From positions 1 through 64,000 of IMG/VR virus record IMGVR_UViG_3300044641_009805: 64,000 nucleotides of DNA; one strand, 5' to 3'. Positions 1 to 52,224 of the stretch are shown here, piece by piece. Position numbers and translations under genes: made by a program. Positions within the stretch are counted from its first letter, which is position 1; each line of letters starts with the position of its first letter. The notes beneath the pieces are model-generated. The model was not told the DNA's origin and searched no databases. It saw nothing but the letters and a program-made list of their open reading frames with translations.

Positions 1-1
1 T

Positions 2-127
2 TTTGGTGTTTTTGTTGGAACAACCAAGAAGGGTTATCCAATGAGAAGATTGAAGATGAGGTTTTTGGTGGATGGTGTTGTTCAAGAGATACCAAATGGA
101 TTGATATTTAAACTTGAAGTTGTGTGA
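2..127 (+). CDS. 3' part of small hypothetical protein (truncated by window edge), probably same SH3-like family
   Basis: Open frame FGVFVGTTKK...FKLEVV* whose TGA overlaps the next ATG. Confidence 0.5.
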   Translation, partial: FGVFVGTTKKGYPMRRLKMRFLVDGVVQEIPNGLIFKLEVV

Positions 128-336
128 TGAAAACCGGGGATCTCATTTGGTACTGTGATGAACATAATTCCTTGAGGAATGATTTCCTTGGGATATACCT
201 AAGTTCCAGAGGAACCAAATGGAGTGATAAACATATGTTCCATAAGGTGATCCTGTGTGGGGGAGGAATAGATGAGTTTATTTTGAGGATTGGTGGAGAA
301 GGTAAGATAGAGGTGGTTCAGGGGTGGGAGGAATGA
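127..336 (+). CDS. small 'GDL' SH3/KOW-like hypothetical protein
   Basis: MKTGDLIW...IEVV; overlapping stop/start with neighbours. Confidence 0.7.
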   Translation: MKTGDLIWYCDEHNSLRNDFLGIYLSSRGTKWSDKHMFHKVILCGGGIDEFILRIGGEGKIEVVQGWEE

Positions 337-578
337 AAATTCGCCCAGGAGATTTGATGTTTTCCAATATAGGTACCAATGTTTGGGATACCCCTGGAGA
401 TCATTCTCCTTCCAGTGTTGTTGATCTTCTGGAGGAAAAACAACCGGTGATTGTGTTGGAAATTTACAAGAGAAAATACTATGAACACAACCTCACTGAA
501 ATAAAGGTTCTCACCCCCAATGGTGCGGTTGGGTGGGTTGCGATAGAGAAAGTGGATAAGGTTTGGGTGATAATGTGA
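333..578 (+). CDS. small SH3-like hypothetical protein
   Basis: MKIRPGDL...KVLTPNGAVGWV; ATGA overlap with the previous gene. Confidence 0.7.
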   Translation: MKIRPGDLMFSNIGTNVWDTPGDHSPSSVVDLLEEKQPVIVLEIYKRKYYEHNLTEIKVLTPNGAVGWVAIEKVDKVWVIM

Positions 579-835
579 TCCCCGGTGATTCAGTACGAGT
601 TCTCTCGGTAAAAAACCACCACAACCCTCTCCACCGGGTTTACGATATCCCCGATAAATTCCGTTGGGTAGGTGAATCCGTGGTACCACGTTCCTTCATC
701 TTCAAGGTTCCAGGAGGATCACTTGGAATCATTCTGGAAATCCAAGGTGAACAACTCAAGGTTCTGTTCCACGGTGGTTCCGTGGGGTGGATCAAGAGTG
801 AACTTGTGGAAGTTGTGGATATCCACACCCTGTGA
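575..835 (+). CDS. small SH3-like hypothetical protein
   Basis: (V)IPGDSV...KVLFHGGSVGWIKSELVEVV; GTGA overlap. Confidence 0.7.
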   Translation: MIPGDSVRVLSVKNHHNPLHRVYDIPDKFRWVGESVVPRSFIFKVPGGSLGIILEIQGEQLKVLFHGGSVGWIKSELVEVVDIHTL

Positions 836-867
836 AATCCTCCACCCACAGGTGATACAATATACCT
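832..867 (+). promoter_or_regulatory. leaderless sigma70-like promoter (GTGAAA-N18-TACAAT-N6-ATG)
   Basis: Matches the 36-nt promoter architecture repeated across the window. Confidence 0.6.
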
Positions 868-1092
868 ATGGAATACCATCCCGGTGATCTCATCCTGGTA
901 AAACCCGGAACCCATGTTCCACCAGGATCCAGATATTCCTCCGGAATCCTACTGGATGTACGAGAGGATCCGCGATTCACCCATTGGAATGGAATCCCCG
1001 AGGTATACCTAAAAATCCTCTGGGTGGATGGGCACCAATCAACCGAGGATATTCGAAAGGTATCACCCTACTATGAATTCATCCACCCTTAA
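868..1092 (+). CDS. small SH3-like hypothetical protein
   Basis: MEYHPGDLILV...KILWVDG. Confidence 0.7.
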   Translation: MEYHPGDLILVKPGTHVPPGSRYSSGILLDVREDPRFTHWNGIPEVYLKILWVDGHQSTEDIRKVSPYYEFIHP

Positions 1093-1336
1093 ACCCGGTT
1101 CACTTCTCAAGGTAAACCACCACGTGGTACCCGAACTCAGGTTCTACCGCGAACTCAAGGATGATATCCAATGGGATGATATCCAATGGGATGGAAAATC
1201 CAAACTATATCCCAACGATATCCTCATTTACCTCGGATCGGAAATGGTTCGTTTCGTTCTATTCGCCCATGTTTTCTCATCTTCCCAAGGTAAAACCGGT
1301 TACGCGGCTCTCACTTACCTCTCGGATCTCAAATGA
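1073..1336 (+). CDS. small SH3-like hypothetical protein
   Basis: MNSSTLKPGSLLKV...VFSSSQGKTGY; paralog of the next ORF. Confidence 0.65.
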   Translation: MNSSTLKPGSLLKVNHHVVPELRFYRELKDDIQWDDIQWDGKSKLYPNDILIYLGSEMVRFVLFAHVFSSSQGKTGYAALTYLSDLK

Positions 1337-1578
1337 AACACCCCGAATTTCCAGGAGGAACCCTTCTCAAGCTCCACGGTTCCCTTCTCTCCACCTCATT
1401 CCACAATGATGGTGTGGATAACCTATGGAATGGAGAACATCGAATCCATCCCCAGGAAATCCTCATTTCCCTGGGGAAAACCCTCAGGACTTTCACCCAC
1501 TACACCCTCGTTTTCTCTCCCACCCACAATCGGGCAGGTTACATTAGAACCGATCACATCTCGGAAATTCAACAGTGA
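1333..1578 (+). CDS. small SH3-like hypothetical protein
   Basis: FPGGTLLKL...VFSPTHNRAGYI. Confidence 0.65.
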   Translation: MKHPEFPGGTLLKLHGSLLSTSFHNDGVDNLWNGEHRIHPQEILISLGKTLRTFTHYTLVFSPTHNRAGYIRTDHISEIQQ

Positions 1579-1787
1579 AACCCGGTGATCTGGTGAGCAT
1601 CACCCACATCGTTGGGATTCGCATGGAAACCAAAACCACGGTAGGAATACTTCTCTCCTACGAACCGGTTGAACCCAACATGTACGATAACATCTACGAT
1701 CTTGAGATACTCACCACCGAAGGTAACGTAATCGGGCTCGGAATTTTTCACGGGGATAAACTGGAGGTGATCAATGAAGATTGGTGA
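1575..1787 (+). CDS. small SH3-like hypothetical protein
   Basis: MKPGDLVSI...LEVINE. Confidence 0.7.
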   Translation: MKPGDLVSITHIVGIRMETKTTVGILLSYEPVEPNMYDNIYDLEILTTEGNVIGLGIFHGDKLEVINEDW

Positions 1788-1986
1788 TCTACTCATCCCA
1801 CTCAACTCCTCCACATCCCACAAACATCATCCAGGATTGGTAACAGGTTTAACCGATAAAAGCTCCAACTTCAACGTGGTATACATCACCTGGAGGAATG
1901 GAGTAACCGATGGTTGGGATCACAACTTCGTTATCAAAAACTTTGAGGTTATCAGTGCACAAAACCCGAATCCCAAGTGTAAATGA
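1774..1986 (+). CDS. small SH3-like hypothetical protein
   Basis: MKIGDLLI...YITWRNG...FEVIS. Confidence 0.7.
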   Translation: MKIGDLLIPLNSSTSHKHHPGLVTGLTDKSSNFNVVYITWRNGVTDGWDHNFVIKNFEVISAQNPNPKCK

Positions 1987-1987
1987 T

Positions 1988-2143
1988 GTGATTCCAGGGG
2001 TACTGGTTCTCCACCATCTCACCCCAGAAATCGGAATTGTTCTCCGTGTAAATTGGGAGGTGGTTGAGTTACTATCGTGCAATGGATCGGTTGTTAGGTG
2101 GGAACTCGATTCATTTCGAAGCACCTATGAGATTCCACTATGA
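1988..2143 (+). CDS. small SH3-like hypothetical protein
   Basis: (V)IPGVLV...IGIVL; start uncertain (track ORF begins 1910). Confidence 0.5.
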   Translation: MIPGVLVLHHLTPEIGIVLRVNWEVVELLSCNGSVVRWELDSFRSTYEIPL

Positions 2144-2322
2144 AAAAAGGTGATCTGGTTCTAATCGATCATTATCATCCCAGAGATAAAACCTATGGGA
2201 TCTACATCAAGGATATTCAACTACGAGATCCTCGATACATACCATCATTTCCAACCTGTGAAATCATCACCTCCAATGGTTTACAGGTAATTGGAGTGGA
2301 AAGAATCCATGTACTCCTATGA
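2140..2322 (+). CDS. small SH3-like hypothetical protein
   Basis: MKKGDLVLI. Confidence 0.7.
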   Translation: MKKGDLVLIDHYHPRDKTYGIYIKDIQLRDPRYIPSFPTCEIITSNGLQVIGVERIHVLL

Positions 2323-2507
2323 AAATGAAACCCTCTGAGGTTCAGGTTGGAGATCTTATGATCACAACAGATTTTCTAGAAGCAGAGTTACAACTGGTAC
2401 TTCGAGTGGATCACAACCGGGATCTCGTTGAGATTTACAACACCAGGTTAGGAAAGGTGGAACACTATCGTTTATCCTGGGTTATGGGTTGTGAAAAGGT
2501 ATGTTAA
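2319..2507 (+). CDS. small SH3-like hypothetical protein
   Basis: VQVGDLMI. Confidence 0.65.
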   Translation: MKMKPSEVQVGDLMITTDFLEAELQLVLRVDHNRDLVEIYNTRLGKVEHYRLSWVMGCEKVC

Positions 2508-2959
2508 ACCTCTATTATTTCCTTTATCCAACTCCTAGGAATCGAAGGTAAGGATGTTCCTATTTCTCCATCCACACCATCAGGAAATTCATTCATAAAC
2601 TCATAGTAACCATCATCACCACTTCCAAACCTATCATCAGGAACCACATACTGGGGATTCAAATATTTCTTTGGAATTTCAACCCTAACCATCACCCCTT
2701 CATTGGTTACCCACCTAGGAGAATCATACCATCCCACGGTAAAATAAATTCCATGTGATTCCGATTGAAGTTTTAATCCAACCCTATCAATCGATTCCTT
2801 ATTACTCAATGGTGATTCATGGGTTACACGAAGAAAACCTCCACCCTCATCCGCAAGATGTTTTAAGGTGGAATAAAACCAAACCTTCTCAGGAATCCAA
2901 TCCTCTTCCTCCAGGTTTTCCCTAATCAATCTTCTCAAATCACCAAGTGAAATCTTCAT
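2504..2959 (-). CDS. LRxxIRE-leader protein with putative ADP-ribosyltransferase (Tpt1/KptA-like) fold
   Basis: N-term MKISLGDLRRLIRE; VTHES..SI..GL..GIYFT and C-terminal IPRSWI resemble ART/Tpt1 motifs (inference). Confidence 0.55.
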   Translation of the reverse strand: MKISLGDLRRLIRENLEEEDWIPEKVWFYSTLKHLADEGGGFLRVTHESPLSNKESIDRVGLKLQSESHGIYFTVGWYDSPRWVTNEGVMVRVEIPKKYLNPQYVVPDDRFGSGDDGYYEFMNEFPDGVDGEIGTSLPSIPRSWIKEIIEV

Positions 2960-2988
2960 GGGGTTAATTATACAATTGAGTTGATATT

Positions 2989-3210
2989 ATGGTTCCTGGT
3001 TCCCTAATCACTCCATCGTGTGCAACCGTTCACATGTATAAATCCATCGAGTTACACCTTGGAGAGTATGTTTCTTCATTTTCCTTCGGTGATTTTGGAA
3101 TCGTAATCGAAACTGGAATTTCACCTTGGGATGTTCAGTATCTAAAGGTTCTACTTCCAGATGGAAAAATTGGGTGGCTCCGCAGAGAAAAAGTGGAAGT
3201 TCTTCTATGA
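2989..3210 (+). CDS. small SH3-like hypothetical protein
   Basis: MVPGSLI...KVLLPDGKIGWL. Confidence 0.7.
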   Translation: MVPGSLITPSCATVHMYKSIELHLGEYVSSFSFGDFGIVIETGISPWDVQYLKVLLPDGKIGWLRREKVEVLL

Positions 3211-3383
3211 AAACCGGTGATCTGATCAAGTTCATCAACCTAACACCTTATGGTAAACGTGCGTACCTAGGGGTTGTTCTGGAATATCATGGAACTTGGG
3301 CGAAGATGTTGTGGTGTTCCGATGTTCATGAACAAATTCAAGATTCCATCATTGTTCCAAAACAATGGAAGGTTATCCAGTGA
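3207..3383 (+). CDS. small SH3-like hypothetical protein
   Basis: MKTGDLIKF; ATGA overlap. Confidence 0.65.
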   Translation: MKTGDLIKFINLTPYGKRAYLGVVLEYHGTWAKMLWCSDVHEQIQDSIIVPKQWKVIQ

Positions 3384-3577
3384 AACGGGGTGATCTTCTC
3401 CATTTTCCGGATGAACCACAATATGTTCACCGTGGAAAATTATACCTTGCCCTCAGGTTTTTCCAGTGGGAATCTCCACACAATGGGGTGGTATTCAATG
3501 AGGTTGATGTGTTGGAATTTGGAACCACCGAAATAAGAAAATTTAGGGTGGAACATCTCAAGGTGGTTGAACGGTGA
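3380..3577 (+). CDS. small SH3-like hypothetical protein
   Basis: (V)KRGDLLHF; GTGA overlap. Confidence 0.65.
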   Translation: MKRGDLLHFPDEPQYVHRGKLYLALRFFQWESPHNGVVFNEVDVLEFGTTEIRKFRVEHLKVVER

Positions 3578-3780
3578 AGATAGGTGATTTATTACTAATT
3601 AAAAACCCGTGTTGGTTGAGGGATGATCCTATTGGTGGTGGTAGTATTGAAAAATATCACCAAGGAACCATGGTAACTCTACTCCAGGAGGATGATCCGG
3701 AATTATACCACCACAAGGTTCTAACCCCGGATGGAAAAACCGGGTGGATCTTTAAGGATAACCTGGAGTTGATACAATGA
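3574..3780 (+). CDS. small SH3-like hypothetical protein
   Basis: MKIGDLLL...KVLTPDGKTGWI. Confidence 0.7.
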   Translation: MKIGDLLLIKNPCWLRDDPIGGGSIEKYHQGTMVTLLQEDDPELYHHKVLTPDGKTGWIFKDNLELIQ

Positions 3781-3992
3781 GTTTCATTGGTAAATTGGTT
3801 CGAATGGATCTTCCTCCACCTCATCCTCACTATGGTGAAACCGGTGTGATTATCCGTGTAAGGAAACCAACCGGTGGAACCGGAGATACCTACCGGGAAT
3901 CCAGGATTCGATATGATATTCTCGTTGGTGATGAGGTTCTTCACGATCAACTCTATGAATACTTTGTTGAATTGGATTTGAGGAAGGGATGA
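3777..3992 (+). CDS. small KOW/SH3-like hypothetical protein
   Basis: IGKLVR...YGETGVII. Confidence 0.65.
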   Translation: MSFIGKLVRMDLPPPHPHYGETGVIIRVRKPTGGTGDTYRESRIRYDILVGDEVLHDQLYEYFVELDLRKG

Positions 3993-4225
3993 GAATTGGT
4001 GATCTTGTTTGTACTCATGTGTTTGGTGTTGATGTATTCCTTGGTGTTGTATTGGATATCCAACCAATGAAGGATGTTTACAAGGATTCCAACCGTGGGG
4101 AGAAGATGAATTCGGTAAAGATCCTATGGGAAAAACCTGTACCAAGTTGGTTAGGTGAAGGAAGAATTTGTGAAGTAACTGATTCAATTCTTCAGGTGGT
4201 GGAACCGGAGGAATTGGATGAGTGA
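3989..4225 (+). CDS. small SH3-like hypothetical protein
   Basis: MRIGDLVC...GVVL...KILW. Confidence 0.7.
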   Translation: MRIGDLVCTHVFGVDVFLGVVLDIQPMKDVYKDSNRGEKMNSVKILWEKPVPSWLGEGRICEVTDSILQVVEPEELDE

Positions 4226-4415
4226 TAAACACCGTGGATTTTTACCTGGTGATCAGGTGAAGGTGGTTAATCCCTGGTACACCAGGAAACCCCCACAACT
4301 CGGTGTTGTTATCGAGGTGGTTCCTAGTGGTGGTGTGGTTAATTCTAACAGGATAAAATTGGTGGTTCCTGAAGGAATTACCTGGAGATGGGATCATGAG
4401 TGCGAGAGAATTTGA
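4218..4415 (+). CDS. small SH3-like hypothetical protein
   Basis: FLPGDQVKV...GVVIEV. Confidence 0.65.
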   Translation: MSDKHRGFLPGDQVKVVNPWYTRKPPQLGVVIEVVPSGGVVNSNRIKLVVPEGITWRWDHECERI

Positions 4416-4635
4416 GTTAGGTTCTCTGGTGAAATTGAACAGAACCTATATTCAACACCCATCCAAACCTATACTTGGTATCCTACTTGAATATGAAAAG
4501 TTTGATGATAACAATGGGGCCTTTGGAAAGGTTTCAAAAATAAAACTATTGTTATCCAATGGAATTTCCAAAGATTATTTCCTGTTCAAGGAGGATGAAT
4601 TGGAGATGGTAAATGAGATCAATATCCCCAGGTGA
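4396..4635 (+). CDS. small SH3-like hypothetical protein
   Basis: FELGSLVKL...GILLEY. Confidence 0.65.
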   Translation: MSAREFELGSLVKLNRTYIQHPSKPILGILLEYEKFDDNNGAFGKVSKIKLLLSNGISKDYFLFKEDELEMVNEINIPR

Positions 4636-4792
4636 TTTGGTGATTCATTCCTATGGAGTTCCAATGATCGGTATGGTGTTGGAGGTTAGAGGTGAATTTC
4701 CTTGGAGTTACCGAGTGGTGTGGAATTCAGGGGAGATAAAGGATTGTGATTTGGGTACCGTGAGGAGAGTGTGGTGTTATGAAGGTAGGTGA
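4613..4792 (+). CDS. small SH3-like hypothetical protein (59 aa, below the ORF-track cutoff)
   Basis: MRSISPGDLVIHSYGVPMIGMVLEV...YRVVWNSG read from the sequence. Confidence 0.65.
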   Translation: MRSISPGDLVIHSYGVPMIGMVLEVRGEFPWSYRVVWNSGEIKDCDLGTVRRVWCYEGR

Positions 4793-5027
4793 TTTGGTTA
4801 CTCCAGATCCTAAGGGATGTACCGATAGAGGTTTACATGTTTACCCATTTTGGGGTTCCAAGGATACCGGAATACCGGTACCGGTGGGAAGTTGGAAGTT
4901 GGGTGAGGTTGGTGTGTTACTGGAATCACTTGAGGTTCAAGGTGGAAATGGTTGTAAGGTGTTGTGTGGTAGTGTTTCAGGTTGGGTTTACCTATGTTAC
5001 CTGAAAATTGTGGATGATGAAAAGTAA
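4779..5027 (+). CDS. small SH3-like hypothetical protein
   Basis: MKVGDLVT...KVLCGSVSGWV. Confidence 0.7.
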   Translation: MKVGDLVTPDPKGCTDRGLHVYPFWGSKDTGIPVPVGSWKLGEVGVLLESLEVQGGNGCKVLCGSVSGWVYLCYLKIVDDEK

Positions 5028-5114
5028 AATGAGGTTTTACTTTGGTGTAGGAAAGGTAACTCCAGGGATACTTTTGTGAGGAGGAGAAACACCTCAGGAA
5101 TATGGCCTTTGGAT

Positions 5115-5297
5115 ATGCTCACCGGTGATTTGGTGTTGCGTGAGGATTTTGATGGGAGAAATATATTGGTGTTTATGGGATGGGTGGATAGGAACAAATA
5201 CCATGCCATGATTTATGATTATCAGGGTTATAGGCCATTTTGGTTCAACCCGAATTATTCGATGGAGAAATGGTGGATTATAAACCCGATAGAATAA
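5115..5297 (+). CDS. small SH3-like hypothetical protein
   Basis: MLTGDLVL. Confidence 0.6.
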   Translation: MLTGDLVLREDFDGRNILVFMGWVDRNKYHAMIYDYQGYRPFWFNPNYSMEKWWIINPIE

Positions 5298-5482
5298 CGG
5301 TTGGTGATCTGGTGAATTGGTATGAGAAGGAATTTGGGGCCAGTGTTGTTGGTTTGGTTTTAGGGGTGAAACCCCATACATTTTATCCGGAAGTTGATAT
5401 ATACTCAATTCTGGATTTTGATGGATTGAAGAGGGAGATATATTCCTCGTTGTGGTCGGAGTATAGGATATTGAATAGATGA
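5270..5482 (+). CDS. small SH3-like hypothetical protein
   Basis: ITVGDLVNW...GLVL. Confidence 0.65.
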   Translation: MVDYKPDRITVGDLVNWYEKEFGASVVGLVLGVKPHTFYPEVDIYSILDFDGLKREIYSSLWSEYRILNR

Positions 5483-5718
5483 AGAATGTGTGGAATAGTA
5501 GCGATAATGGAGGAAATCCACCTGAGGGGTTGGATGAAAAGGTGAGGAAGGGTGATCTGGTTAGGTTTACCCATTTTCCTTCATTTAATGGTTTTGTTGG
5601 GATTTACCTGGGGGTTGATGTTGAGGGTGGTAGATCCAAGTGGAAGTTTGCCACCGATAGGGGAATGGAATGGGTGGATCCAAAGGGGTTGTCACATTAT
5701 AGGGTTGATTTGGTGTGA
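5479..5718 (+). CDS. small SH3-like hypothetical protein
   Basis: VRKGDLVRF...GIYLG. Confidence 0.65.
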   Translation: MKNVWNSSDNGGNPPEGLDEKVRKGDLVRFTHFPSFNGFVGIYLGVDVEGGRSKWKFATDRGMEWVDPKGLSHYRVDLV

Positions 5719-5763
5719 AAATAAGCTGTGTAAAACAATCGCTGCGAGATGTAGATTTTACAC

Positions 5764-6762
5764 GTGAATGGAATTTTACCTCTAATCGGCCTGATAGGCT
5801 CTACACTTCTTTCAGTTTGGGCTGCTTTCAAATACCTGCTAACATCATCTTATCGGCTTGAGGATGGTGTATCAAAGCTTCTCCTGTCGCGTATTCGAAA
5901 AGAAAAGCCCCTATCCTGGATGTTCGGTGGAGAACATGTAACACCGCCACGATTTCCAGAGCTGTGGGAAGGTTTTCTGTTGTTGGACAAGATTCCCCTG
6001 TATTTCCACCGCAACGAGAGGTTGATGACTGCCGGGTGGAAATCAAAGGAATCGATCTCAACCCTGTCGTTCTTCAGGTGGAATAGGTCACAAGTGGATA
6101 GGTTGTTGGCCCATGTGAACACAGGTGAATCGATACAGGTTTCAGCTCTTACACCCCACGGAACCGATAGGCTTGGTGAACTTGAACCTGGCGGTGAAGG
6201 TGAGTTGTACCTGAATCCTGGGAGCTACGAGGATATTGAGGAGGATGTGAAGAGGGTTTTGTCAGGAGAGTTGAATAAAACTGGTGCTCTTCTCTATGGA
6301 TCTCCAGGAAATGGAAAGACTCGATTCGTTCGTTACCTGTCAAAGAAGTATTCGTTGCCAATCAATGTTGTTTACCTCCTTCCAGACTACAACAACCTCG
6401 ACATCAGTCTCATGTTCTCCAATATTCCTCAACGATCAATCGTTCTTCTCGAGGACTTCGACAACCTCTTCGACGGGCGGAAGTGCACCATTCCAAACGA
6501 CCAGATAAAGTTTACCTTCGACTCTATCATCAATGCCCTCGATGGGGTACACAACGATTATCGACAGGTGGTATTCATCATGACCGTGAATGATATTGGA
6601 AAGGTGGATGACAGCATCAAAGAGAGGCCATCAAGGTTCAAGTTTGTCAAGGAATTTGGTCCGCCAAAACTTGAGGTGCGGGAGAGAATTTTGGGTGATA
6701 GGAACCTTGCTATCATTGCTGAAGGATTGTCATTAGATAAGGTGGTTCATTTTAAAAATTAA
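5764..6762 (+). CDS. membrane-anchored AAA+ ATPase (BCS1-like)
   Basis: N-terminal TM helix; Walker A GSPGNGKT, Walker B LLEDFD, INALDG, sensor TVN, RPSRF. Confidence 0.8.
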   Translation: MNGILPLIGLIGSTLLSVWAAFKYLLTSSYRLEDGVSKLLLSRIRKEKPLSWMFGGEHVTPPRFPELWEGFLLLDKIPLYFHRNERLMTAGWKSKESISTLSFFRWNRSQVDRLLAHVNTGESIQVSALTPHGTDRLGELEPGGEGELYLNPGSYEDIEEDVKRVLSGELNKTGALLYGSPGNGKTRFVRYLSKKYSLPINVVYLLPDYNNLDISLMFSNIPQRSIVLLEDFDNLFDGRKCTIPNDQIKFTFDSIINALDGVHNDYRQVVFIMTVNDIGKVDDSIKERPSRFKFVKEFGPPKLEVRERILGDRNLAIIAEGLSLDKVVHFKN

Positions 6763-6806
6763 AAAGAAGACATTTGTAAATGTGATTGATATTTAGGCTG
6801 CAATAT

Positions 6807-7154
6807 ATGAGAAAAGTTAATAAGCCTTGGGGTTACGAATTGATCTGGGCAGAAAATCCAAAATATCTTGGTAAGATTCTTTACGTCATGGCTGGTAAAC
6901 GTTTATCCTTGCAATACCACAAAGTGAAGGATGAAACAATTCTTGTTAAGAAAGGCACCATGAAGCTAGAGTTTGGAAATTCGAAGACCGGTCTCCAAGA
7001 GATTGAAATGAATGAAGGAGACTCCTTCCACATCTCACCTGGGCTTCTTCACAGGATGGCTGCCGTCACTGACTGCGAAGTCATCGAGGTCTCGACTTCC
7101 GAGCTAGCAGACGTGGTCAGAGTAGAAGATGATCATGGTCGTGTGAAACCCTGA
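6807..7154 (+). CDS. cupin domain protein (mannose-6-phosphate isomerase type II C-terminal-like)
   Basis: KPWGYE, RLSLQYHKVKDET, HRM, IEVST, DVVRVEDDHGR motifs. Confidence 0.85.
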   Translation: MRKVNKPWGYELIWAENPKYLGKILYVMAGKRLSLQYHKVKDETILVKKGTMKLEFGNSKTGLQEIEMNEGDSFHISPGLLHRMAAVTDCEVIEVSTSELADVVRVEDDHGRVKP

Positions 7155-8702
7155 TCACTGGTCTTCGAACCATGAGATTGAAAAAGTAGCTTCTGAAGTG
7201 TTCTTATTCGTTTTGGCTGCTATTGTCAATATCTCGCCGCTCGTGAGGAAGAAATTTTCTGCCTGTATGGTCAAGATGGTAGCCTCGTTCGCACCAACTA
7301 TGAAGCTTTTGACGAGTTGAGTATTAGGTCCGATGCTTATTGAAGTCGCAGACAGATCAGCTGCAGCTATTGATTTATTTGTATCAACGTGTTGAAAGTT
7401 GACAGGACCTCCGAGCACGGCATTCTTGTATACATAGACTTCCGTCAAAATTGTGCTCGTGGCATTGCCTGTGTCCGTACCGACCGATATGTTGAAAAGA
7501 TCTATCTCGCCGTAATTACATTGACCCAGGAAGTTTCTGTTGGCACGTATGGTCAACACAGGTGTGAGCGTGGTGTCAAGATCAAGTGCTGCCCCGACGC
7601 GAGCAGAACCCGTAGCAAATGCTGGTCCTATGTTACGAATCACCAATCCTTCAGCGAAAACTCCTGCTGAAGCACCTTTGATGGTGACAGGTGTAGCCAA
7701 CGATCCGCTGTTGTAGACACCCCACTTGGCGGTCATCTGGGGATTTCTGAGGACAGTGGTGGACCTGCTGTTGGCGTTCTTTATCATGTGGCACCCAGCC
7801 AACAGGCCCGTTTCGGAGTTCTCCACCGCAAAGAATGCATTGCCGAACCCGAGATACTGGAAGCCGACGGAGTAAACATTTCCATACCTCGGGTTCAAGG
7901 CAAATCTCGATTCACCTGTTCCGTCCATCTTATCGATGTTCCACTGGGACTGTGAGATGAATGTCTCGACCGGTAGTTCTCCCGTTTGAACCACCGCCGT
8001 TGTGGCTATCTGAGTTGCTCCGTTGAACAGAGAAAAAGTTCCTCCTATGGGCCCTGGGCGTCTCGATACGAAGAAGACGGTTCCATCGATGGATTCAGCA
8101 TCCCAGCCTGAACCGACCTGTGAGTAATCTGCCTGTGATAATTGGTAAGAAGTCTGGTTGGCGGAACTACCGCCATTTATCGCGACAGTTCTCGTGGCCC
8201 CTCCGAGGGTGACCGTGATGGTGGCAGCTCCGACTGGGGGTACCGTGATGGAAAAGCTCCTGATTTCTCGTTTGGATCTCTCGCGGTGAAGTATGCCGAA
8301 CTCATTATTCCGTTGAGCGAAGAAGTAACCGGTCTCTTCGTTACCGATCCCTGCCAGCTGAAGCGTGTTGGGTGCACCTGGATCGAAGATCGCAGTCATC
8401 CTACACATGGAGCCCTGTCCAGGGCGATACTTGAGACTTCGAGACAGCCTCACCTCAGCGGATCCTGATGTAGATGTTCCTGAAGAGCTCGTCATGATTC
8501 CTAGTGAAGCGGCCACAAATGCACCAGTCCCAGCTGACGATGTGGTCCATTGTACTGGATTTACGGTGTAGATGAACGCAGCCTGAGCCGTGGGGTGTGC
8601 TTCGGACACAAGGGGAGACCCGAAAGGACCGACAGCGTTAGCGTTGATGCTTCCCTCGCTGGCAAATAAAGATTTCTTACCAATCGTCGTAAATCCTGAC
8701 AT
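7155..8702 (-). CDS. putative virion structural protein (beta-rich)
   Basis: 515 aa Ser/Thr/Gly-rich; YRPGQG and FQYLGFG segments seen in phage structural proteins; GGAG RBS. Confidence 0.55.
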   Translation of the reverse strand: MSGFTTIGKKSLFASEGSINANAVGPFGSPLVSEAHPTAQAAFIYTVNPVQWTTSSAGTGAFVAASLGIMTSSSGTSTSGSAEVRLSRSLKYRPGQGSMCRMTAIFDPGAPNTLQLAGIGNEETGYFFAQRNNEFGILHRERSKREIRSFSITVPPVGAATITVTLGGATRTVAINGGSSANQTSYQLSQADYSQVGSGWDAESIDGTVFFVSRRPGPIGGTFSLFNGATQIATTAVVQTGELPVETFISQSQWNIDKMDGTGESRFALNPRYGNVYSVGFQYLGFGNAFFAVENSETGLLAGCHMIKNANSRSTTVLRNPQMTAKWGVYNSGSLATPVTIKGASAGVFAEGLVIRNIGPAFATGSARVGAALDLDTTLTPVLTIRANRNFLGQCNYGEIDLFNISVGTDTGNATSTILTEVYVYKNAVLGGPVNFQHVDTNKSIAAADLSATSISIGPNTQLVKSFIVGANEATILTIQAENFFLTSGEILTIAAKTNKNTSEATFSISWFEDQ

Positions 8703-8755
8703 ATTTCTCCCCTAACAAAAATCTTGTAGTATAATTAGGTAAGGGATCATAAAAT

Positions 8756-9148
8756 ATGTCGCTAAGTTGGCCACAGAATGGAGAGTATTACGCACCAGCC
8801 TATCAGGTATCGGCGTTACCCTATCTGTCCTCATCAATTATATCTGTCGGGAACGTGCACAAGTATGAGTTCCCCTACGTCACCAAGTTCATCAACATCG
8901 TCAACAGAGGTGCTAACGTCGGCGACAAAATTGCTCTGGCATTTACCGAAAATGGTCTTCGGACAGGAAACTACATCACGCTCGATCAAGGTGTCGCCAT
9001 CGACCAAGAGATCAGGACTTCCGTTCTCTTCATCTCAGGTTCCGATGGGACATCCGTCGACTATCAGATCTTCTGCGGGCTCACGACAATCCCAACCAAA
9101 AACTTCTTGACGCTCACCGGCTCCAACGGACACTCAGGCGTCGGTTGA
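8756..9148 (+). CDS. putative structural protein, paralog of 19075..19479
   Basis: Shared YQVSALP/FQTSGLP, FP.VTK.I, FTENG..NY, LTTI, LTGS..GVG. Confidence 0.6.
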   Translation: MSLSWPQNGEYYAPAYQVSALPYLSSSIISVGNVHKYEFPYVTKFINIVNRGANVGDKIALAFTENGLRTGNYITLDQGVAIDQEIRTSVLFISGSDGTSVDYQIFCGLTTIPTKNFLTLTGSNGHSGVG

Positions 9149-9252: not shown

Positions 9253-9561
9253 GGAACGGTAAATCAATAGGTTCAGATTAGCGGTCTCATCAAAATGGTG
9301 ACTTCAATCAGTAATGATTGTCGAAAATCGGATGAATTCGGGGAAGTCTAAGTCGCAAGATATGATAATCCCGAGCCAAGTCCACCAAGCATGGTGGAAA
9401 GGTGTAGAGACTACCTGGTGTTGAATGATCTTTCAACGTAATACAGGGTTAGCGTCCGACACCCTAACAGTTAGGCTGAGGGTGATGATATAGTCCACAG
9501 AGTCAAGAAATTGACACAAATGTGAAACCGAAATGTGTGGGTTCGAGTCCCACCCGTTCCA
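9253..9561 (+). tRNA. tRNA with CAU anticodon (probably Ile2, lysidine type), interrupted by a group I intron
   Basis: Exon1 9253-9290 ends CTCAT and exon2 9525-9561 starts AAACCG; acceptor GGAACGG/CCGTTCC-A; T-loop GTTCGAGTC. Confidence 0.85.
9291..9524 (+). ncRNA. group I self-splicing intron in the tRNA anticodon loop (after position 36)
   Basis: P1 with U.G wobble (TCAT|CA-aaa-TGGTGA); core elements AATTCGGGGAA, AATCCCGAGCC, GTAGAGACTA, GATATAGTCC; terminal G. Confidence 0.9.
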
Positions 9562-9571: not shown

Positions 9572-10360
9572 TCAGCATAAACCGCTGAAGGTTCCTTTTT
9601 TTATTTCTTCGATCTCTTGCTTTTTGAGAACAATCAATTTTTCAGGAAACTGAGACCATTTGGCTAGATCTCTTTCTCTTTCATAGCCCTTGACTTCGAT
9701 GTATAGATCTAGATTAGGCAGATAAAAGTCAGGAAAGTATGTTCTAGATCCGTTCCATTCATAGGGAAACCCTTTCGTACACCTTTGAGGATCAAGACCA
9801 TTTATTTTTGCCCATTTATAAAATTCTACTTCCCATTTACCTTGAAGTTTGATTCCGTCCATGATAACTTGCTTTACTCTGCCTCTTCTTCCACCCATGA
9901 AAGCTTCAGGATTTTCAGCGATTCTTTTCTTCATCATTTCTGATATTTGTTTTCTCTTTTCTTCAGACATCTTGAAAGGACGCTTTTGCTTTCTAATAAA
10001 ATTTCTTTTTTGACGAGCATCATATCTTTTCTTTTCTTCTTCAGACATGTCTTCTATGGTGAGATATTCAGGAGTTTCTCTTCCTCCCCTATGTTCATCA
10101 CACCACTTCTTCGTTTTGCTGGCTGCAAGAAATATTTTTCCACATTTTGCGCATGTAATCTCATATCTTTTTTCAAAAGTTTTTCCTGCGCTCCATCCTT
10201 TTTGTCCCATCAACTTTTTTGAAACCTTTTCGTTAATCTCTTTTCTCTTTTTAGAAGTTGAAGTAGATCTAGCACAAGGCTGGCTACAAAATCTCCCTGA
10301 TCCATAGAATTTTTCTGGTATTTTTCCACATTTTTCACACGGTTTTAGATTATTTTCCAT
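9572..10360 (-). CDS. free-standing homing-endonuclease-like protein (Zn ribbons + NUMOD3-like + PD-(D/E)XK nuclease)
   Basis: CEKC..FCSQPC, CAKC, MSEEKRKQIS, YFPDFYLP..IEVKG. Confidence 0.75.
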   Translation of the reverse strand: MENNLKPCEKCGKIPEKFYGSGRFCSQPCARSTSTSKKRKEINEKVSKKLMGQKGWSAGKTFEKRYEITCAKCGKIFLAASKTKKWCDEHRGGRETPEYLTIEDMSEEEKKRYDARQKRNFIRKQKRPFKMSEEKRKQISEMMKKRIAENPEAFMGGRRGRVKQVIMDGIKLQGKWEVEFYKWAKINGLDPQRCTKGFPYEWNGSRTYFPDFYLPNLDLYIEVKGYERERDLAKWSQFPEKLIVLKKQEIEEIKKGTFSGLC

Positions 10361-20761: not shown

Positions 20762-21136
20762 GGGGCCAAAATAGTTTCGACGTGGTTTTGACATCGATCT
20801 ATGCAGGCCCAGGTGCACGAGGAACCTGGTAAAAATCCAAGTGACGTATAGTTGCCAACGACAACGGCTACGCTCCAGCTGCCCTAGCGGCCTGACTGGT
20901 TGGGTGGTGACAACCTAGAAACAGAAAGTCACAATCAATGGTTATCCTCATTGTATGAGGTGGGTTTCTCTCGGAAGGTGGTTCCGGAAGACGACTAACG
21001 GGTTTCGATCCGACCGGTCGTAAAATTGGTCAGATCGAATAGACTAGGATGGCGTCGATAAAATCATTCCAAGCCTGTGGACGAATTGTTTGATTGAAGA
21101 ATTGCGGACACCGGGGCAGTACCGGTTGGCTCCACC
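20762..21136 (+). ncRNA. ssrA: tmRNA; tag peptide ANDNGYAPAALAA (20854-20895)
   Basis: 5' GGGGCCA..TTTCGAC; 3' T-arm + TGGCTCCACC with G3.U70; resume codon GCC AAC GAC AAC; tag ends LAA*. Confidence 0.92.
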
Positions 21137-21165
21137 TGTTGTATATTTATAATCTGTAAAAACAT

Positions 21166-25743: not shown

Positions 25744-27678
25744 TTACGCGTCACGCCACAAATTATTTGAAGCATACACAAGAATTTCTTCTGCGCTTTC
25801 GGCGGTGTATCCATGATCCTTGATGAGTGTTGCCACCATCTCATTGTACTTTTCCTTCTGCTCCTCGTCGCGAGTTTTGCTCTTGGTCACGACTCGAGCA
25901 AGTGATTTGACCGATGAGATGAGGAATGATTCAATGGCTTCTCGGAGTGGTTCATAGGAACGGAATCCAACCTTTTCACCACGACGCATCTTGGCGAACA
26001 TGTAGGCAGCAACGTCGGAGCGGAAACCATCACGGGCTGAACCGCTGATACCGATCTGTTCTTCGATCGAAGCCATGAACTGTTCGTCTGGCTTTCTCTC
26101 TTCCTTTGTAACACGATCCTTGAGTTTGACACGGGTCGTGTATGCTTCAGCGTTGTCGAGATATGTATCGAATAGAGATTGAGCCTGCTCCTCGTATGCG
26201 GAGATAAATGCCTTTGCGATCTCATTCTCAAGGATCTTGAGGTATTCTTCTCGTACCGTCTTTTGGAGGATTTCTAGGCACTTTGTCTTGAACGTCTCGT
26301 CGTTGATCTGCTCCTTCACCATCTTGGTCAAAGACTCAATGACAGAAACTGGTGTAATCATTCCCTTGTCGGATGCCGTGAGGGCATTGTCCAATGCCTT
26401 GGTGATGAAACGCGTAGAGATACCATCCATGCCTTCGTGTTTAGCTTCCTCACGAAGATCCTTGATGTCGACCTTACGAACGCGACCCTTCTCAAGGACG
26501 TCCTCGCCGTTATAGATCTTCATTTTCGTCAATAAATCACATTTAGCTGATGGCTTCAAGCGGCTCATGACCGAGAACATTGATACAACCTTGAGGGTGT
26601 GAGGTGCGATGTGTGCCTTGAAGTCTGATTTACCTAGCATCTTCTCATAGATCTTCTGTTCCTGATCCACCTCAAGACAGTATGGAACTGCGATCTTCAC
26701 GATGCGGTCCATGATGGCTTCATTGGTGTGTTCTGACTGGAAGCGATTCCACTCAGCCTCATTACAGTGTGCGAGGATGACTCCGTCGAAGTGAAGCATA
26801 TCGCTCTTTCCGGGTGATGGAACCCTCTTCTCCTGTGTGGCGGTGATGATTGTATGGAGGAACTCAATCTCGTTCTTGAAGACCTCGACCAGTTCCACGA
26901 TGCCACGGTTACCTACGTTGAATGCTCCCGTGAGCGAAAGAGCTCGTGGATCATCCTCGGCAAACTTATCCAACTTAGAGATATCTACCGACCCAATGAG
27001 AACAGACACGTCCTGACTATTGGCATCCATTGGAGGAACAGCCGCGACACCTCTACGACCACGTTGCGAGAATGTCGTCTCCTCAACCTCGAAGTCCTCA
27101 TATTTACCGCCGTAATCGTTGAGAAGCTTGTGGCGGGCGACTGGTGAAATATCTCCATCAATCTTCACGTTGAGTGCCTTCTCAAATTCCGAGCGAAGAG
27201 AACGTGGTACGAGTTGCAGGGGTTCACCACGATGAGGATCTCCCTTGAGGTGATAGTACTTCTTGCCTTCGAGCGCACGTTTAATGTGTTCGGTTAATGC
27301 TGACTTACCAGCTCCAACTGGTCCCATGAGAAGAAGAACCTGACGAGATTCCTCGCCCTTATGTGCCGCTGAAGACAGGAACGACATGACCTTGTCAATG
27401 ACCGTCTCCATTCCGAAGAATTCACCTTCAAAGTACTTGTGGACCTTCACGGCATCGCCATCGAACACCTTGAATTTACGTGAATCCGAATCAGGCATCA
27501 CGTAGGAACCATGTTCCTCAATGGCCTCATATAACCTACGATGCGCTGATTTTACTATCGACGGTTCTTTCTCGACGAGGTCGACGTAATCCATAAGATT
27601 ACCAGAGAACTTTTTTGTTTTGGATGACTCTTCTCGAGCCGTTTGAATTTGTTTGAGTAGTTGCTTCTTGACGCTCAT
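25744..27678 (-). CDS. prkA: PrkA/YeaG family AAA+ serine kinase
   Basis: FFGME, LLLMGPVGAGKS, GNRGIVELVEVFK, HCNEAEW, EGMDGISTRF. Confidence 0.93.
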   Translation of the reverse strand: MSVKKQLLKQIQTAREESSKTKKFSGNLMDYVDLVEKEPSIVKSAHRRLYEAIEEHGSYVMPDSDSRKFKVFDGDAVKVHKYFEGEFFGMETVIDKVMSFLSSAAHKGEESRQVLLLMGPVGAGKSALTEHIKRALEGKKYYHLKGDPHRGEPLQLVPRSLRSEFEKALNVKIDGDISPVARHKLLNDYGGKYEDFEVEETTFSQRGRRGVAAVPPMDANSQDVSVLIGSVDISKLDKFAEDDPRALSLTGAFNVGNRGIVELVEVFKNEIEFLHTIITATQEKRVPSPGKSDMLHFDGVILAHCNEAEWNRFQSEHTNEAIMDRIVKIAVPYCLEVDQEQKIYEKMLGKSDFKAHIAPHTLKVVSMFSVMSRLKPSAKCDLLTKMKIYNGEDVLEKGRVRKVDIKDLREEAKHEGMDGISTRFITKALDNALTASDKGMITPVSVIESLTKMVKEQINDETFKTKCLEILQKTVREEYLKILENEIAKAFISAYEEQAQSLFDTYLDNAEAYTTRVKLKDRVTKEERKPDEQFMASIEEQIGISGSARDGFRSDVAAYMFAKMRRGEKVGFRSYEPLREAIESFLISSVKSLARVVTKSKTRDEEQKEKYNEMVATLIKDHGYTAESAEEILVYASNNLWRDA

Positions 27679-27711
27679 GTTGTTATGTATACCTCTCCCT
27701 GCTCCAGTGTA

Positions 27712-30973: not shown

Positions 30974-31801
30974 ATTCCTGAAGGTCCCGAGCTTCGTCAT
31001 TCAAGAGATCTTTTAAGAGAGATTTTGCTCAACAAACGCATCAAAAAGTTCGACCTCGTCGGCGGACGATACACCAAGAAACCCATCGAGGGATTGCACG
31101 AATTTCTGCGAGATAACGAGAAGAATTCTTACGTTGTCGAATCCGTCGACGTCAAAGGCAAGTTCATGTGGTGGACGATGGGTCCCTGGAAAATGTGGTG
31201 CACATATGGTATGTCAGGTCAATGGACAACCACACCGCCAGATAGAAACACCGCCGTGATACTCTCGTATGGTGAAGATTCAAAGAGCATCGGGTTTCAC
31301 GACGTTCGTAGGTTCGGTACACTAAAATTCGTCAAAGATGAAGGAGTGCACAGAAAGAAATTGGAAAGTCTCGGTCCTGATGTTCTTGGAGATGACGAAT
31401 TGACACCAGAAATATTCACAAAAAGAACGCTGGGTAAACCCAATAGGACAATCTGCGAGGCCCTCATGGATCAATCTACGGTGGCTGGGATTGGCAACTA
31501 TCTACGTGCAGAGATTCTGTTCGCCTGCGGTGTTGATCCATGGTGTAACGTGACTGACATATCTTCTCAAGAGTACATAAGGTTATGTGAGGAATCCGCG
31601 AAGATTTCTCGTCAGTCCTATTTGTCTCAAGGAGCCTCTATCAAGACCTACAGGGACGTGAATGGATTAACGGGAACATCTCAATTTTTCTTCAAGGTGT
31701 ACGCTAGATCACGATGTCCCAAGGGTCATGAGATCCGCAGCGAACGTGACAACGGAGGAAGGATGGTCCACTGGTGTCCACAATGTCAGCCACCACGGTG
31801 A
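30974..31801 (+). CDS. mutM: Fpg/Nei family DNA glycosylase/AP lyase (ATT start)
   Basis: In-frame (M)PEGPELR upstream of the track start; KGK, GMSG, DVRRFG, LMDQ..AGIGNYL..E (H2TH), C-terminal Zn finger. Confidence 0.9.
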   Translation: MPEGPELRHSRDLLREILLNKRIKKFDLVGGRYTKKPIEGLHEFLRDNEKNSYVVESVDVKGKFMWWTMGPWKMWCTYGMSGQWTTTPPDRNTAVILSYGEDSKSIGFHDVRRFGTLKFVKDEGVHRKKLESLGPDVLGDDELTPEIFTKRTLGKPNRTICEALMDQSTVAGIGNYLRAEILFACGVDPWCNVTDISSQEYIRLCEESAKISRQSYLSQGASIKTYRDVNGLTGTSQFFFKVYARSRCPKGHEIRSERDNGGRMVHWCPQCQPPR

Positions 31802-48278: not shown

Positions 48279-48376
48279 ACCCCCGCACCCACCCGGGCGG
48301 AGACAAATTCCAGAACTCCTCCATCCTCCATAATACATATAGACGATCCCGCGGCGGGAGAAAGACAAACACCCAC

Positions 48377-48643: not shown

Positions 48644-48670
48644 CACACCCCCACAAGAAACTGAACACCC

Positions 48671-49599: not shown

Positions 49600-49609
49600 G
49601 TGAGTGCAA

Positions 49610-52146: not shown

Positions 52147-52147
52147 A

Positions 52148-52223: not shown

Positions 52224-52224
52224 T

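What the first reader, a model, noticed from the sequence alone, without database searches (positions are those of the whole stretch)
1..5720. 5.7-kb zone almost free of GpC, GAC and GTC
Seen: by eye only about 35-40 GC dinucleotides occur in 1-5720, and none between ~3452 and ~4401. GAC and GTC are nearly absent, while CG, CC, GG, GATC and CCGG are common. The proteins are therefore almost Ala-free, Asp is GAT and Val is almost never GTC. The constraint is at the DNA level: the unrelated minus-strand gene 2504-2959 obeys it too (1 Ala in 151 aa), and same-family genes at 49378-50006 do not. Normal composition resumes abruptly at ~5724. Inference: this may be first-injected DNA purged of restriction/defence target motifs (compare the T5 first-step-transfer region), or a region subject to a context-specific modification or mutator.
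Basis: partly seen in the sequence, partly recalled or inferred. Interest (0 to 1): 0.82.

Follow-up and report, generated by a model that had tools for sequence, protein, structure and literature searches.

The report
Jumbo-phage gene island purged of GAC/GTC
An uncultured freshwater jumbo phage keeps a block of small accessory genes (at least 5.7 kb, about 12 kb in relatives) almost free of the DNA words GAC, GTC and GC, so its proteins have nearly no alanine; this looks like target avoidance at a 2-3 base scale not reported before.

Summary
Window 1-5720 has 3 GAC/GTC (about 151 expected) and 36 GpC (about 264 expected). The rest of the window is normal, and the switch comes within 10 nt of a stop codon.

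The window is the start of a 278-kb metagenomic jumbo-phage contig, and the zone is cut by the contig end. In close relatives it spans about 12 kb.

It is a hypervariable island. It holds about 24 diverged SH3-like 70-aa paralogues and a probable ADP-ribosyltransferase-fold gene on the minus strand. Relatives also carry RtcB and a phosphodiesterase there.

GAC/GTC loss is the conserved core across lineages of 43-58% G+C. GpC loss is an extra of this lineage.

- The signal sits at 2-3 nt, because 4-mers match the expectation from 3-mers.
- It is equal for reverse-complement pairs, so it acts on DNA.
- It is actively maintained: only 8 GWC-changing substitutions against about 53 expected.
- There is no deaminase signature.
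- An IS200/IS605 element inserted in the zone has normal composition.

Best reading: selection keeps the island free of the target of a DNA-acting enzyme with very short specificity. That enzyme is unidentified. First entry could not be tested; zone depth is not doubled.

The parts
1..5720 (.). GAC/GTC-free, GpC-poor island. It is truncated on the left by the contig end.
   Evidence: Searches give the counts. Searches show that the window is positions 1-64000 of contig Ga0453727_0000002. Searches show that relatives extend the zone upstream.
127..2507 (+). Eleven tightly packed or overlapping genes for 60-90-aa SH3-like beta-barrel paralogues (N-terminal M-K-x-G-D-L-V motif). A partial twelfth gene lies at 2-127.
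   Evidence: Gene calls are and the alignment A1 (mean identity 16%). The AlphaFold model has pLDDT 87 and five strands. Foldseek finds only generic Tudor/SH3/KOW barrels at E > 0.08. Pfam gives a weak SH3_3 hit.
2504..2959 (-). 151-aa probable ADP-ribosyltransferase-fold protein. Its N-terminal motif is MKISLGDLRRLIRE. It has one Ala and obeys the same DNA constraint.
   Evidence: The model has pLDDT 80. Top Foldseek hits are Tpt1/KptA, DarT1 and PARP14/15, E 7e-3 to 0.1. Named neighbours in the ESM atlas are PARP, Tox-ART-HYD1 and Arr-ms. H47, D108 and D109 are invariant. There is no Pfam or PDB sequence hit.
3034..5718 (+). Thirteen more SH3-like small paralogue genes. The last one stops at 5716-5718.
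832..861 (+). Sigma-70-like promoter candidate, GTGAAATC..N..GATACAAT, in one of the few intergenic gaps.
   Evidence: It is a consensus match only. A second copy of the same motif lies at 2947-2976, and GATACAAT also occurs at 3771-3778.
2947..2976 (+). Second copy of the same promoter-like motif, in the gap after the minus-strand gene.
5728..5763 (.). Perfect 8-nt inverted repeat, GTGTAAAA-N20-TTTTACAC, in the 45-nt gap where normal composition resumes.
   Evidence: Its function was not tested.
5764..6762 (+). Membrane-anchored AAA ATPase (BCS1-like) with normal composition. It is the conserved neighbour of the island and was used as the anchor to fetch relatives.
   Evidence: Pfam AAA 4e-11. 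Relatives were fetched.

Best explanation
The zone is a hypervariable accessory-gene island of a jumbo tailed phage. Purifying selection on the double-stranded DNA keeps it free of a very short target: the triplet GAC/GTC (5'-GWC-3') in the whole clade, and in this lineage also the GpC step.

Shown:
- The depletion is at the 2-3 nt level.
- It is symmetric between strands.
- It is independent of reading frame and of gene family.
- Its borders are sharp.
- It is actively maintained in recent evolution.
- It is strong enough to remove alanine from about 25 proteins.

Inferred:
- The island must stay uncut, un-nicked or unmodified by a DNA-acting enzyme of 2-3 bp specificity at a time or place where the rest of the genome is protected in some other way or is not yet exposed.
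- The most likely such time is the start of infection. The island carries small host-takeover or counter-defence-type genes: an ART-fold protein here, and RtcB, a cyclic-phosphate REC domain and a phosphodiesterase in relatives.
- The same triplet is avoided in lineages with 43% to 58% G+C, which probably have different hosts. I therefore favour a clade-conserved, phage-borne enzyme (a host-DNA nuclease or nickase, or a base modifier) over a host restriction system.
- The GpC avoidance may be a host-driven addition or a widened specificity of the same enzyme.

The enzyme itself was not identified.
For: - Magnitude and borders.
- Acts on DNA: reverse-complement pairs are equally depleted although G is 24% and C is 19% on the coding strand.
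- Tied to the zone, not to a gene family: unrelated genes in the zone obey it. These are the ART-like gene; RtcB with 0 GWC vs 43 expected and 25 GAT/0 GAC; cREC_REC; and the phosphodiesterase. SH3-like paralogues outside the zone do not obey it.
- Short-word level: 4-mers equal the Markov expectation from 3-mers. The surviving GC show no missing NGCN context.
- Conserved core: GAC/GTC O/E is 0-0.11 in W, L017, L018, L037, L048, L010, L156 and L157. GC-containing triplets grade from 0.08 up to about 1. In the G+C-rich lineage only GAC/GTC is depleted, 20 vs 435.
- Active maintenance: in comparisons with relatives of about 91-97% identity, 8 GWC-changing differences were seen where about 53 are expected. 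For GC, 63 were seen vs about 81 expected.
- Not imposed by position alone: an IS200/IS605 inside the zone of L018 and a late structural gene next to the zone in L011 have normal composition.
- Real, not an artefact: the same zone is found in JGI, ENA, NCBI and Logan assemblies of many lakes.
- Concept precedent: the position of a motif in the first-injected, hypervariable, anti-defence-rich region decides restriction sensitivity in Autographiviridae (PMC12455610).
Against: - No enzyme with GWC or GpC specificity was found in the 73 kb of this genome that I could read.
- No classical enzyme that cuts at a 3-bp site is known to me (own knowledge).
- Time of expression and order of DNA entry are unknown.
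- Zone depth equals flank depth, and a relative gives a circular map. A fixed first-entering end is therefore unproven.
- The rest of the genome has normal GWC content. If the enzyme cuts, some further protection of the rest has to be assumed.
- A 1.6-kb IS with 29 GWC is tolerated in the zone of one abundant relative, so the cost per site cannot be absolute.
- The substitution test assumes a uniform mutation spectrum and ignores selection on the proteins.
Confidence: 0.5

Rival explanations
1. The island is the DNA that enters the cell first (T5-like first-step transfer, or slow T7-like entry). It is purged of the targets of host restriction or defence nucleases so that it survives until its products disarm them.
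For: - Island content fits early, anti-defence genes: many tiny genes, an ART-fold protein, and RtcB in relatives.
- The island is hypervariable, like known leading regions (PMC12455610).
- Nearly every contig that reaches the island ends in it. That would also happen at a physical genome end.
Against: - The target is a 2-3 nt word, not a 4-8 bp site.
- The same triplet is avoided in lineages of 43% and 58% G+C, whereas host restriction specificities turn over fast.
- There is no 2x depth.
- A relative assembles as a circle with the zone internal.
- The window contig starts in mid-gene, so that break is an assembly break.
- T5's FST region shows no such purge.
Confidence: 0.22
2. Avoidance of priming sites. 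5'-GTC-3' is the recognition triplet of T7-type primase-helicases. An island lacking GTC on both strands would never be primed by such an enzyme. The lagging strand would then stay single-stranded for longer, or primase loading would be kept out of a heavily transcribed early region.
For: - The triplet matches exactly the only enzyme class I know with this specificity (T7 gp4; PMC2910064).
- Strand-symmetric loss is what avoidance on both templates would give.
- The factor would be phage-borne and conserved in the clade, which fits.
Against: - No primase gene was seen in the 73 kb read.
- No known benefit of a priming-free zone.
- It does not explain the loss of GpC and ACG/CGT.
- A 12-kb stretch without priming is easily bridged by one long Okazaki fragment, so the strong selection seen is hard to justify.
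Confidence: 0.08
3. Context-specific mutation. A deaminase or other mutator acting on G(W)C, or a base modification that miscodes, has eroded these words within one region.
For: - A small zinc deaminase-like gene (HAE...PCxxC) lies at about 67.4 kb of the contig.
- GAT/ATC and GTT/AAC are enriched.
- C is lower than G on the coding strand.
Against: - States that replace lost GC are transitions in only 18 of 40 cases, no more than the overall spectrum.
- The deficit of new GWC (8 vs about 53) is larger than decay of hypermutable sites would give at this divergence (my estimate).
- All ORFs are intact, and RtcB keeps a Pfam score of 430 bits.
- An IS and neighbouring late genes are untouched, and the borders sit at gene ends.
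- Genes on both strands are affected.
Confidence: 0.07
4. Avoidance of binding or cross-linking sites of small DNA-damaging molecules, or of a dimeric enzyme acting on guanine. 5'-GC and 5'-GNC are the steps where guanines of opposite strands lie closest. From my own knowledge, these are the sites of actinomycin intercalation and of mustard- or azinomycin-type interstrand cross-links.
For: - In this lineage the avoided set is exactly G-N0-C and G-N1-C, while C-N-G is far less affected.
- AGC/GCT and ACG/CGT, which I recall as preferred anthracycline triplets, are the rarest GC- and CG-containing triplets.
Against: - In the G+C-rich lineage only GAC/GTC is lost. GGC/GCC and GC are normal, so the shared core is not 'GNC'.
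- A lesion anywhere in the genome would be harmful, yet only the island is purged.
- There is no evidence that the hosts make such compounds.
Confidence: 0.04
5. Foreign origin. The island was acquired from a donor whose whole genome has this composition, and it is only slowly drifting back.
For: Borders are sharp, and the island's position relative to the ATPase differs between relatives.
Against: - The constraint is being enforced now.
- It holds across lineages whose anchor protein is only 55% identical, and through the divergence of the paralogues to 16% identity.
- In the G+C-rich lineage the island has the G+C content of its own flanks.
- No donor-like genome was found among 130 loci.
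Confidence: 0.04

Closest known systems
Motif-free leading (first-injected) region of Autographiviridae phages that escape a Type I restriction system (PMC12455610)
   Same: A local, not genome-wide, absence of a target motif. The region is hypervariable, holds small early or anti-defence genes, and decides the outcome although the motif occurs elsewhere in the genome.
   Different: There the motif is one bipartite Type I site with a handful of copies, and entry order is known. Here a 3-nt word (about 150 expected copies in 5.7 kb) plus a dinucleotide are purged, the proteins are reshaped, and entry order is unknown.
Phage T5 first-step-transfer region (left terminal repeat, pre-early genes A1, A2, dmp)
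   Same: A block of roughly 10 kb of small early genes. It is the classic case of 'first DNA in must survive'. How T5 DNA escapes its own A1-dependent DNA degradation is still open (bioRxiv 10.64898/2026.04.02.716235).
   Different: T5's FST region shows no 2-3-mer below O/E 0.54. It is a terminal repeat, whereas depth here is not doubled. No A1, A2 or dmp family was named by the Pfam or PHROG scans; I ran no direct comparison with the T5 proteins. An injection stop signal cannot be recognised from sequence.
Genome-wide restriction-site avoidance in phages (for example GATC-free Staphylococcus phage K, GGCC-poor Bacillus phages; own knowledge)
   Same: Selection removes a nuclease target from phage DNA.
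   Different: Those cases concern 4-6 bp palindromes over whole genomes. Here the 4-mers are no rarer than their 3-mers predict, and the purge is confined to one island.
Very short-specificity DNA enzymes: chlorovirus nickases, nucleases and methyltransferases (CCD, RAG, RGCY, GpC), DpdA 7-deazaguanine insertion (GA, GGC), DarT ADP-ribosylation (TNTC), T7 primase (GTC)
   Same: They recognise 2-4 nt, the scale of the word avoided here. Several are virus-borne and are used against host DNA or to mark viral DNA. T7 primase is documented in PMC2910064 and DarT in PMC11543638; the others are from my own knowledge.
   Different: None is known to recognise GWC, apart from the primase's GTC. None was found in the sequence available. 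In those systems the virus protects itself by modification, not by leaving a motif-free island.

Membership tests
T5-type first-step-transfer (FST) region | Lies at a physical genome end inside a long direct terminal repeat | tested here: not met
   Contig word depth is 19-26 in the zone and 24.7 outside in run X1, and 9.6-14 vs 14.1 in X2. There is no doubling. Whether the zone is near an end could not be tested.
T5-type first-step-transfer (FST) region | Enters the cell first and pauses at an injection stop signal | not testable with these tools
   Only assembled contigs of the runs were served, with no read starts. An 8-nt inverted repeat sits at the border, but its function is unknown.
T5-type first-step-transfer (FST) region | Compositional purge comparable to the one seen here | tested here: not met
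   T5 positions 1-9140 have a lowest 2-3-mer O/E of 0.54. The purge is therefore not a known FST property.
Classical restriction-site avoidance | Specific 4-8 bp (mostly palindromic) sites are rarer than their sub-words predict | tested here: not met
   Across 31.7 kb of zones, 4-mer counts equal the Markov expectation from 3-mers. All NGCN contexts survive, and GGCC is over-represented among the surviving GC.
Leading-region motif avoidance (PMC12455610) | Local absence of a target in a hypervariable block rich in early or anti-defence genes | tested here: met
   Local purge. Hypervariability: variant unitigs, a 1790-bp deletion variant, and differing gene sets. Gene content.
Leading-region motif avoidance (PMC12455610) | The region is the first to be injected, and the motif is that of a host restriction system | not testable with these tools
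   The host is uncultured. The only hint is PrkA at 83% identity to a Bdellovibrionota MAG contig. There are no terminus or methylome data.
Regional hypermutation (deaminase or RIP-like) | Transition-biased replacement of the lost word, and decay of the genes | tested here: not met
   18 of 40 replacements of GC are transitions. ORFs are intact. RtcB scores 430 bits.
T7-type primase recognition site | The triplet 5'-GTC-3' on the template strand | tested here: met
   The avoided word is GTC on both strands. The specificity is taken from PMC2910064.
T7-type primase recognition site | The phage encodes a gp4-like primase-helicase | not tested
   None was seen in contig positions 1-73,092. The other 205 kb were not read.
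ADP-ribosyltransferase fold (H-Y-E/D clade) for gene 2504-2959 | ART fold with a conserved His, an aromatic residue and an acidic catalytic residue | tested here: inconclusive
   Foldseek to Tpt1, DarT1 and PARP gives E 7e-3 and TM 0.35-0.46. The ESM atlas neighbours are PARP, Tox-ART-HYD1 and Arr. H47, D108 and D109 are invariant. There is no sequence-profile hit.

The most novel reading that the evidence does not exclude
The island is immune by lack of target to the phage's own weapon. A clade-conserved, phage-borne enzyme, delivered with the virion or made early, cuts, nicks or chemically marks DNA at GWC (and at GpC in this lineage) to wreck or mark host DNA. The only phage DNA exposed or active at that moment is an island that carries no such sites. 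The rest of the genome would be protected by delayed entry, later modification or a shelter. This would be a sequence-based solution to the unsolved T5-type question of how a phage spares its own first DNA while destroying the host's. It would also imply a DNA enzyme with 3-bp specificity.
Probability: 0.2. Interest if true: 0.9.

Novelty: new variant of a known kind. Interest (0 to 1): 0.8.

Why it matters
Local target avoidance is known in phages, but only for a few copies of long restriction motifs. Here a trinucleotide is removed about fifty-fold, and a dinucleotide about seven-fold, from a block of roughly 12 kb. This holds in several diverged phage lineages and has forced about 25 proteins to do without alanine.

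Three consequences follow:
- It points to a DNA-acting factor of 2-3 bp specificity that nobody has described. Such a factor would be of interest as an enzyme.
- It gives a purely computational mark for an accessory gene island, probably early or counter-defence, in uncultured jumbo phages. The many unknown small proteins inside are candidates for host-takeover functions.
- It offers a natural experiment on how far protein sequence can bend to a constraint on the nucleotides.

Tried and rejected
- **Similar DNA.** Megablast of the zone against GenBank phages and PLSDB plasmids found nothing. tblastn of flank proteins found only distant cultured relatives at 27-34% identity. No genome with known termini could be used.
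- **Terminal overlap.** The first 33 nt of the contig do not recur at its other end.
- **Reaching the far end of the 278-kb and 282-kb contigs by exact-protein look-ups.** This failed. Those proteins are not on record there.
- **Reads.** Only Logan contigs were served, so there were no read starts, no strand information and no modification calls. The 'RNA' run looks like DNA.
- **Promoter and terminator scan.** No enrichment over shuffles.
- **RNA-level explanation (an RNase target).** Rejected because reverse-complement pairs are equally depleted on an almost one-stranded coding block.
- **Translation or codon explanation.** Rejected because the words are absent in all frames and across codon borders.
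- **Gene-family explanation.** Rejected.
- **Different motifs purged in different relatives.** An unbiased scan of 80 loci around the anchor gene found only GAC/GTC zones with their GC-containing companions, and only in the sub-clade with at least 55% anchor identity.
- **Function of the SH3-like paralogues.** The fold search gave only generic barrels.
- **Literature.** Searches for a trinucleotide-free phage region found nothing.

Full report
**What the window is.** The window is identical to positions 1-64000 of a 278,435-bp metagenomic contig. That contig is JGI 3300044641 Ga0453727_0000002, also held as IMGVR_UViG_3300044641_009805 and NCBI JBFDRI010012331.1. It is a tailed jumbo phage from lake water.
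- PHROG hits include virion and baseplate proteins.
- The window also holds a GroEL-type chaperonin, a PrkA-SpoVR-DUF444 operon, 13 tRNAs, a tmRNA and a group I intron.
- No cultured relative is closer than about 30% protein identity.
- The best cellular match of PrkA is 83%, to a contig of a Bdellovibrionota MAG. This is only a weak hint about the host.

In 1-5720 there are 36 GpC (O/E 0.14), 1 GAC and 2 GTC. Each triplet is expected about 74-90 times. Poisson P is about 1e-60 or lower.
- Any G followed one base later by C has O/E 0.08, and the effect fades by a spacing of 3-5.
- Outside the zone the longest GAC/GTC-free stretch in the window is 256 nt. Inside, the stretches are 3967 and 1488 nt.
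- The last zone gene stops at 5718, and GC reappears at 5725, 5741 and 5744.
- Alanine is 0.9% of codons against 7.4% elsewhere. Asp is 125 GAT/0 GAC, Val has 0 GTC, and Gly has 0 GGC.

**Extent.** The zone is cut by the contig end.
- The window starts in the middle of a small gene whose full copy is seen in a 97% relative.
- In that relative (L017) the first 11,990 bases of the contig hold only 6 GAC/GTC.
- In a 298-kb relative the zone is internal and about 12.5 kb long (L018 2450-15000). It is interrupted by a 1.6-kb IS200/IS605 element (TnpA plus TnpB) that has a normal 29 GAC/GTC.
- That 298-kb genome was assembled twice, at 297,894 and 297,898 bp, with different start points. It therefore has a circular map.
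- Almost every other contig that reaches the island ends in it.
- Logan contigs show why. The zone is broken into many short unitigs with alternative alleles and a 1790-bp deletion variant, while its depth (19-26) equals that of the flank (24.7).
- The island is therefore hypervariable and is not a collapsed long terminal repeat.

**Content.**
- In the window there are 24 tightly packed plus-strand genes of 58-90 aa. They form one very diverged family (mean identity 16%, N-terminal MKxGDLV).
- The family's confident model is a five-stranded SH3/Tudor-like barrel without a specific structural relative.
- The minus-strand gene 2504-2959 models as an ADP-ribosyltransferase-like fold. Foldseek hits are Tpt1/KptA, DarT1 and PARP14/15 at E about 1e-2. 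ESM neighbours are PARP, Tox-ART-HYD1 and Arr. The evidence is moderate.
- Its N-terminal motif (..LRRLIRE..) recurs on other proteins inside and outside the islands. It might be a virion-targeting or cleavage signal; this is my inference only.
- Relatives carry other genes in their zones, all free of GAC/GTC: an alkaline-phosphatase-superfamily lipoprotein, RtcB RNA ligase (Pfam 1.9e-128) and a cyclic-phosphate REC domain.
- This is the gene content of an accessory, host-takeover or counter-defence island. I could not test when it is expressed.

**What is conserved.**
- I fetched relatives through the neighbouring membrane AAA ATPase. An unbiased scan for any depleted 2-3-mer found zones only in the sub-clade with at least 55% anchor identity, and always with the same word.
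- GAC/GTC has O/E 0-0.11 in every zone.
- AGC/GCT and CGC/GCG are at 0.08-0.4, GCC/GGC and GCA/TGC at 0.15-0.6, and ACG/CGT at 0.36-0.7.
- In the G+C-rich lineage (L010, L156; 56-59% G+C) GAC/GTC is the only word specifically depleted, 20 vs 435, with GpC at 0.9.
- GWC avoidance is therefore the core. GpC avoidance is an add-on that is strongest in the window's lineage.

**Nature of the constraint.**
- It acts on DNA. Each word and its reverse complement are equally rare on a strand that is about 92% coding and has G 24%, C 19%.
- It is a property of the zone, not of a gene family. Unrelated genes obey it, and SH3-like paralogues outside zones do not (window 49378-50135; L018 1049-2450).
- It is a 2-3 nt signal. 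4-mers occur as often as their 3-mers predict, and the surviving GC sit in all sixteen contexts, GGCC included. Ordinary 4-8 bp restriction sites are therefore not the target.
- It is enforced now. Between the window and relatives of about 91-97% identity, 8 differences create or remove a GWC where about 53 are expected. For GC the figures are 63 against about 81. GWC is thus under strong selection and GpC under weaker selection.
- It does not look mutational. The states replacing lost GC are transitions in 18 of 40 cases, genes are intact, and the IS and adjacent late genes are unaffected.

**Mechanism.** I conclude that selection keeps the island free of the target of a DNA-acting factor with very short specificity.
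- The same triplet is avoided by lineages that differ by 15 points of G+C. A factor inherited with the phage, or a very conserved host enzyme, is therefore more economical than a host restriction system. This is an inference.
- The factor might be a nuclease or nickase used on host DNA, a base modifier from which the island must be exempt, or a primase. T7-type primases recognise exactly 5'-GTC-3' (PMC2910064).
- None of these was found in the 73 kb of the genome that I could read.
- First entry remains possible but unsupported. T5's own FST region has no comparable purge.

**Known analogues.** The nearest documented phenomenon is the motif-free leading region of Autographiviridae that escape a Type I system (PMC12455610). 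How T5 spares its own DNA from A1-dependent degradation is still open (bioRxiv 10.64898/2026.04.02.716235). Five literature searches found no report of a trinucleotide-free phage island.

**Verdict.** The feature is real, highly significant, evolutionarily maintained and so far undescribed. Its kind, local target avoidance, is known. Its scale and its target are not. The acting enzyme and the timing remain to be found.

Noticed in passing
window 9278-9517 (+), with ORF 9572-10360 (-): Group I intron (Rfam 93.6 bits) lying next to an endonuclease-like ORF (PHROG 15137). JGI and ENA gene calls differ around 7155-9148. I did not work out which gene it interrupts.
   Followed up: no
window 20762-21137 (+): Full-length tmRNA gene carried by the phage (Rfam 76 bits, model positions 1-374).
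   Followed up: no
window 52059-53806 (-) and 62143-62217 (+): Thirteen tRNA genes, including tRNA-Ala(UGC). There is none for Asp or Val, so the tRNA set does not explain the codon pattern of the zone.
   Followed up: partly
window 25744-30191 (-): A PrkA / SpoVR / DUF444 (YeaH) operon inside a phage. PrkA is 83% identical to a contig of a Bdellovibrionota MAG and 72% to Halobacteriovorax. This may hint at the host, or those MAG contigs may be mis-binned phage.
   Followed up: partly
window 48000-64000: G+C rises to 53-63%, against 35-50% in the first 48 kb. This is an unusually heterogeneous composition for one phage genome.
   Followed up: no
window 2504-2959, 48671-48919; L017 1893-2488; L010 12126-12638; L156 7953-8820: Unrelated proteins share an N-terminal motif, (M)K(L/I)(T/S)xxQLRR(I/L)IREE. 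It could be a capsid-targeting or protease-cleavage signal of proteins packed in the virion.
   Followed up: partly
window 5764-6762 and its relatives (alignment A2): A BCS1-like AAA ATPase with an N-terminal membrane helix. It lies beside the island in the relatives examined that have one, on either side of it, and directly abuts it only in some. About a hundred lake-metagenome contigs encode a relative of it.
   Followed up: partly
L018 6780-8367 (contig IMGVR_UViG_3300009181_000033): An IS200/IS605 element (Y1 transposase plus TnpB) inserted in the island of a jumbo phage, with normal composition.
   Followed up: yes
L027 15133-15489 (contig positions about 67,382-67,738); window 31025-31801 and 62250-63092: Other DNA- or NAD-related genes are a small zinc deaminase-like protein (HAE..PCxxC, Pfam dCMP_cyt_deam_1 at 1.7e-5), an Fpg/Nei-type DNA glycosylase and a SIR2-family protein.
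   Followed up: no
window 1159-1193: An exact 15-nt tandem duplication that gives DDIQW-DDIQW in one small paralogue. It is a sign of ongoing slippage or duplication in the array.
   Followed up: no
L117 (phage T5, NC_005859 1-45000): GAC/GTC is also among the rarest trinucleotides of T5 (O/E 0.55 in the FST region, 0.66 in the next 35 kb), though far from absent.
   Followed up: no
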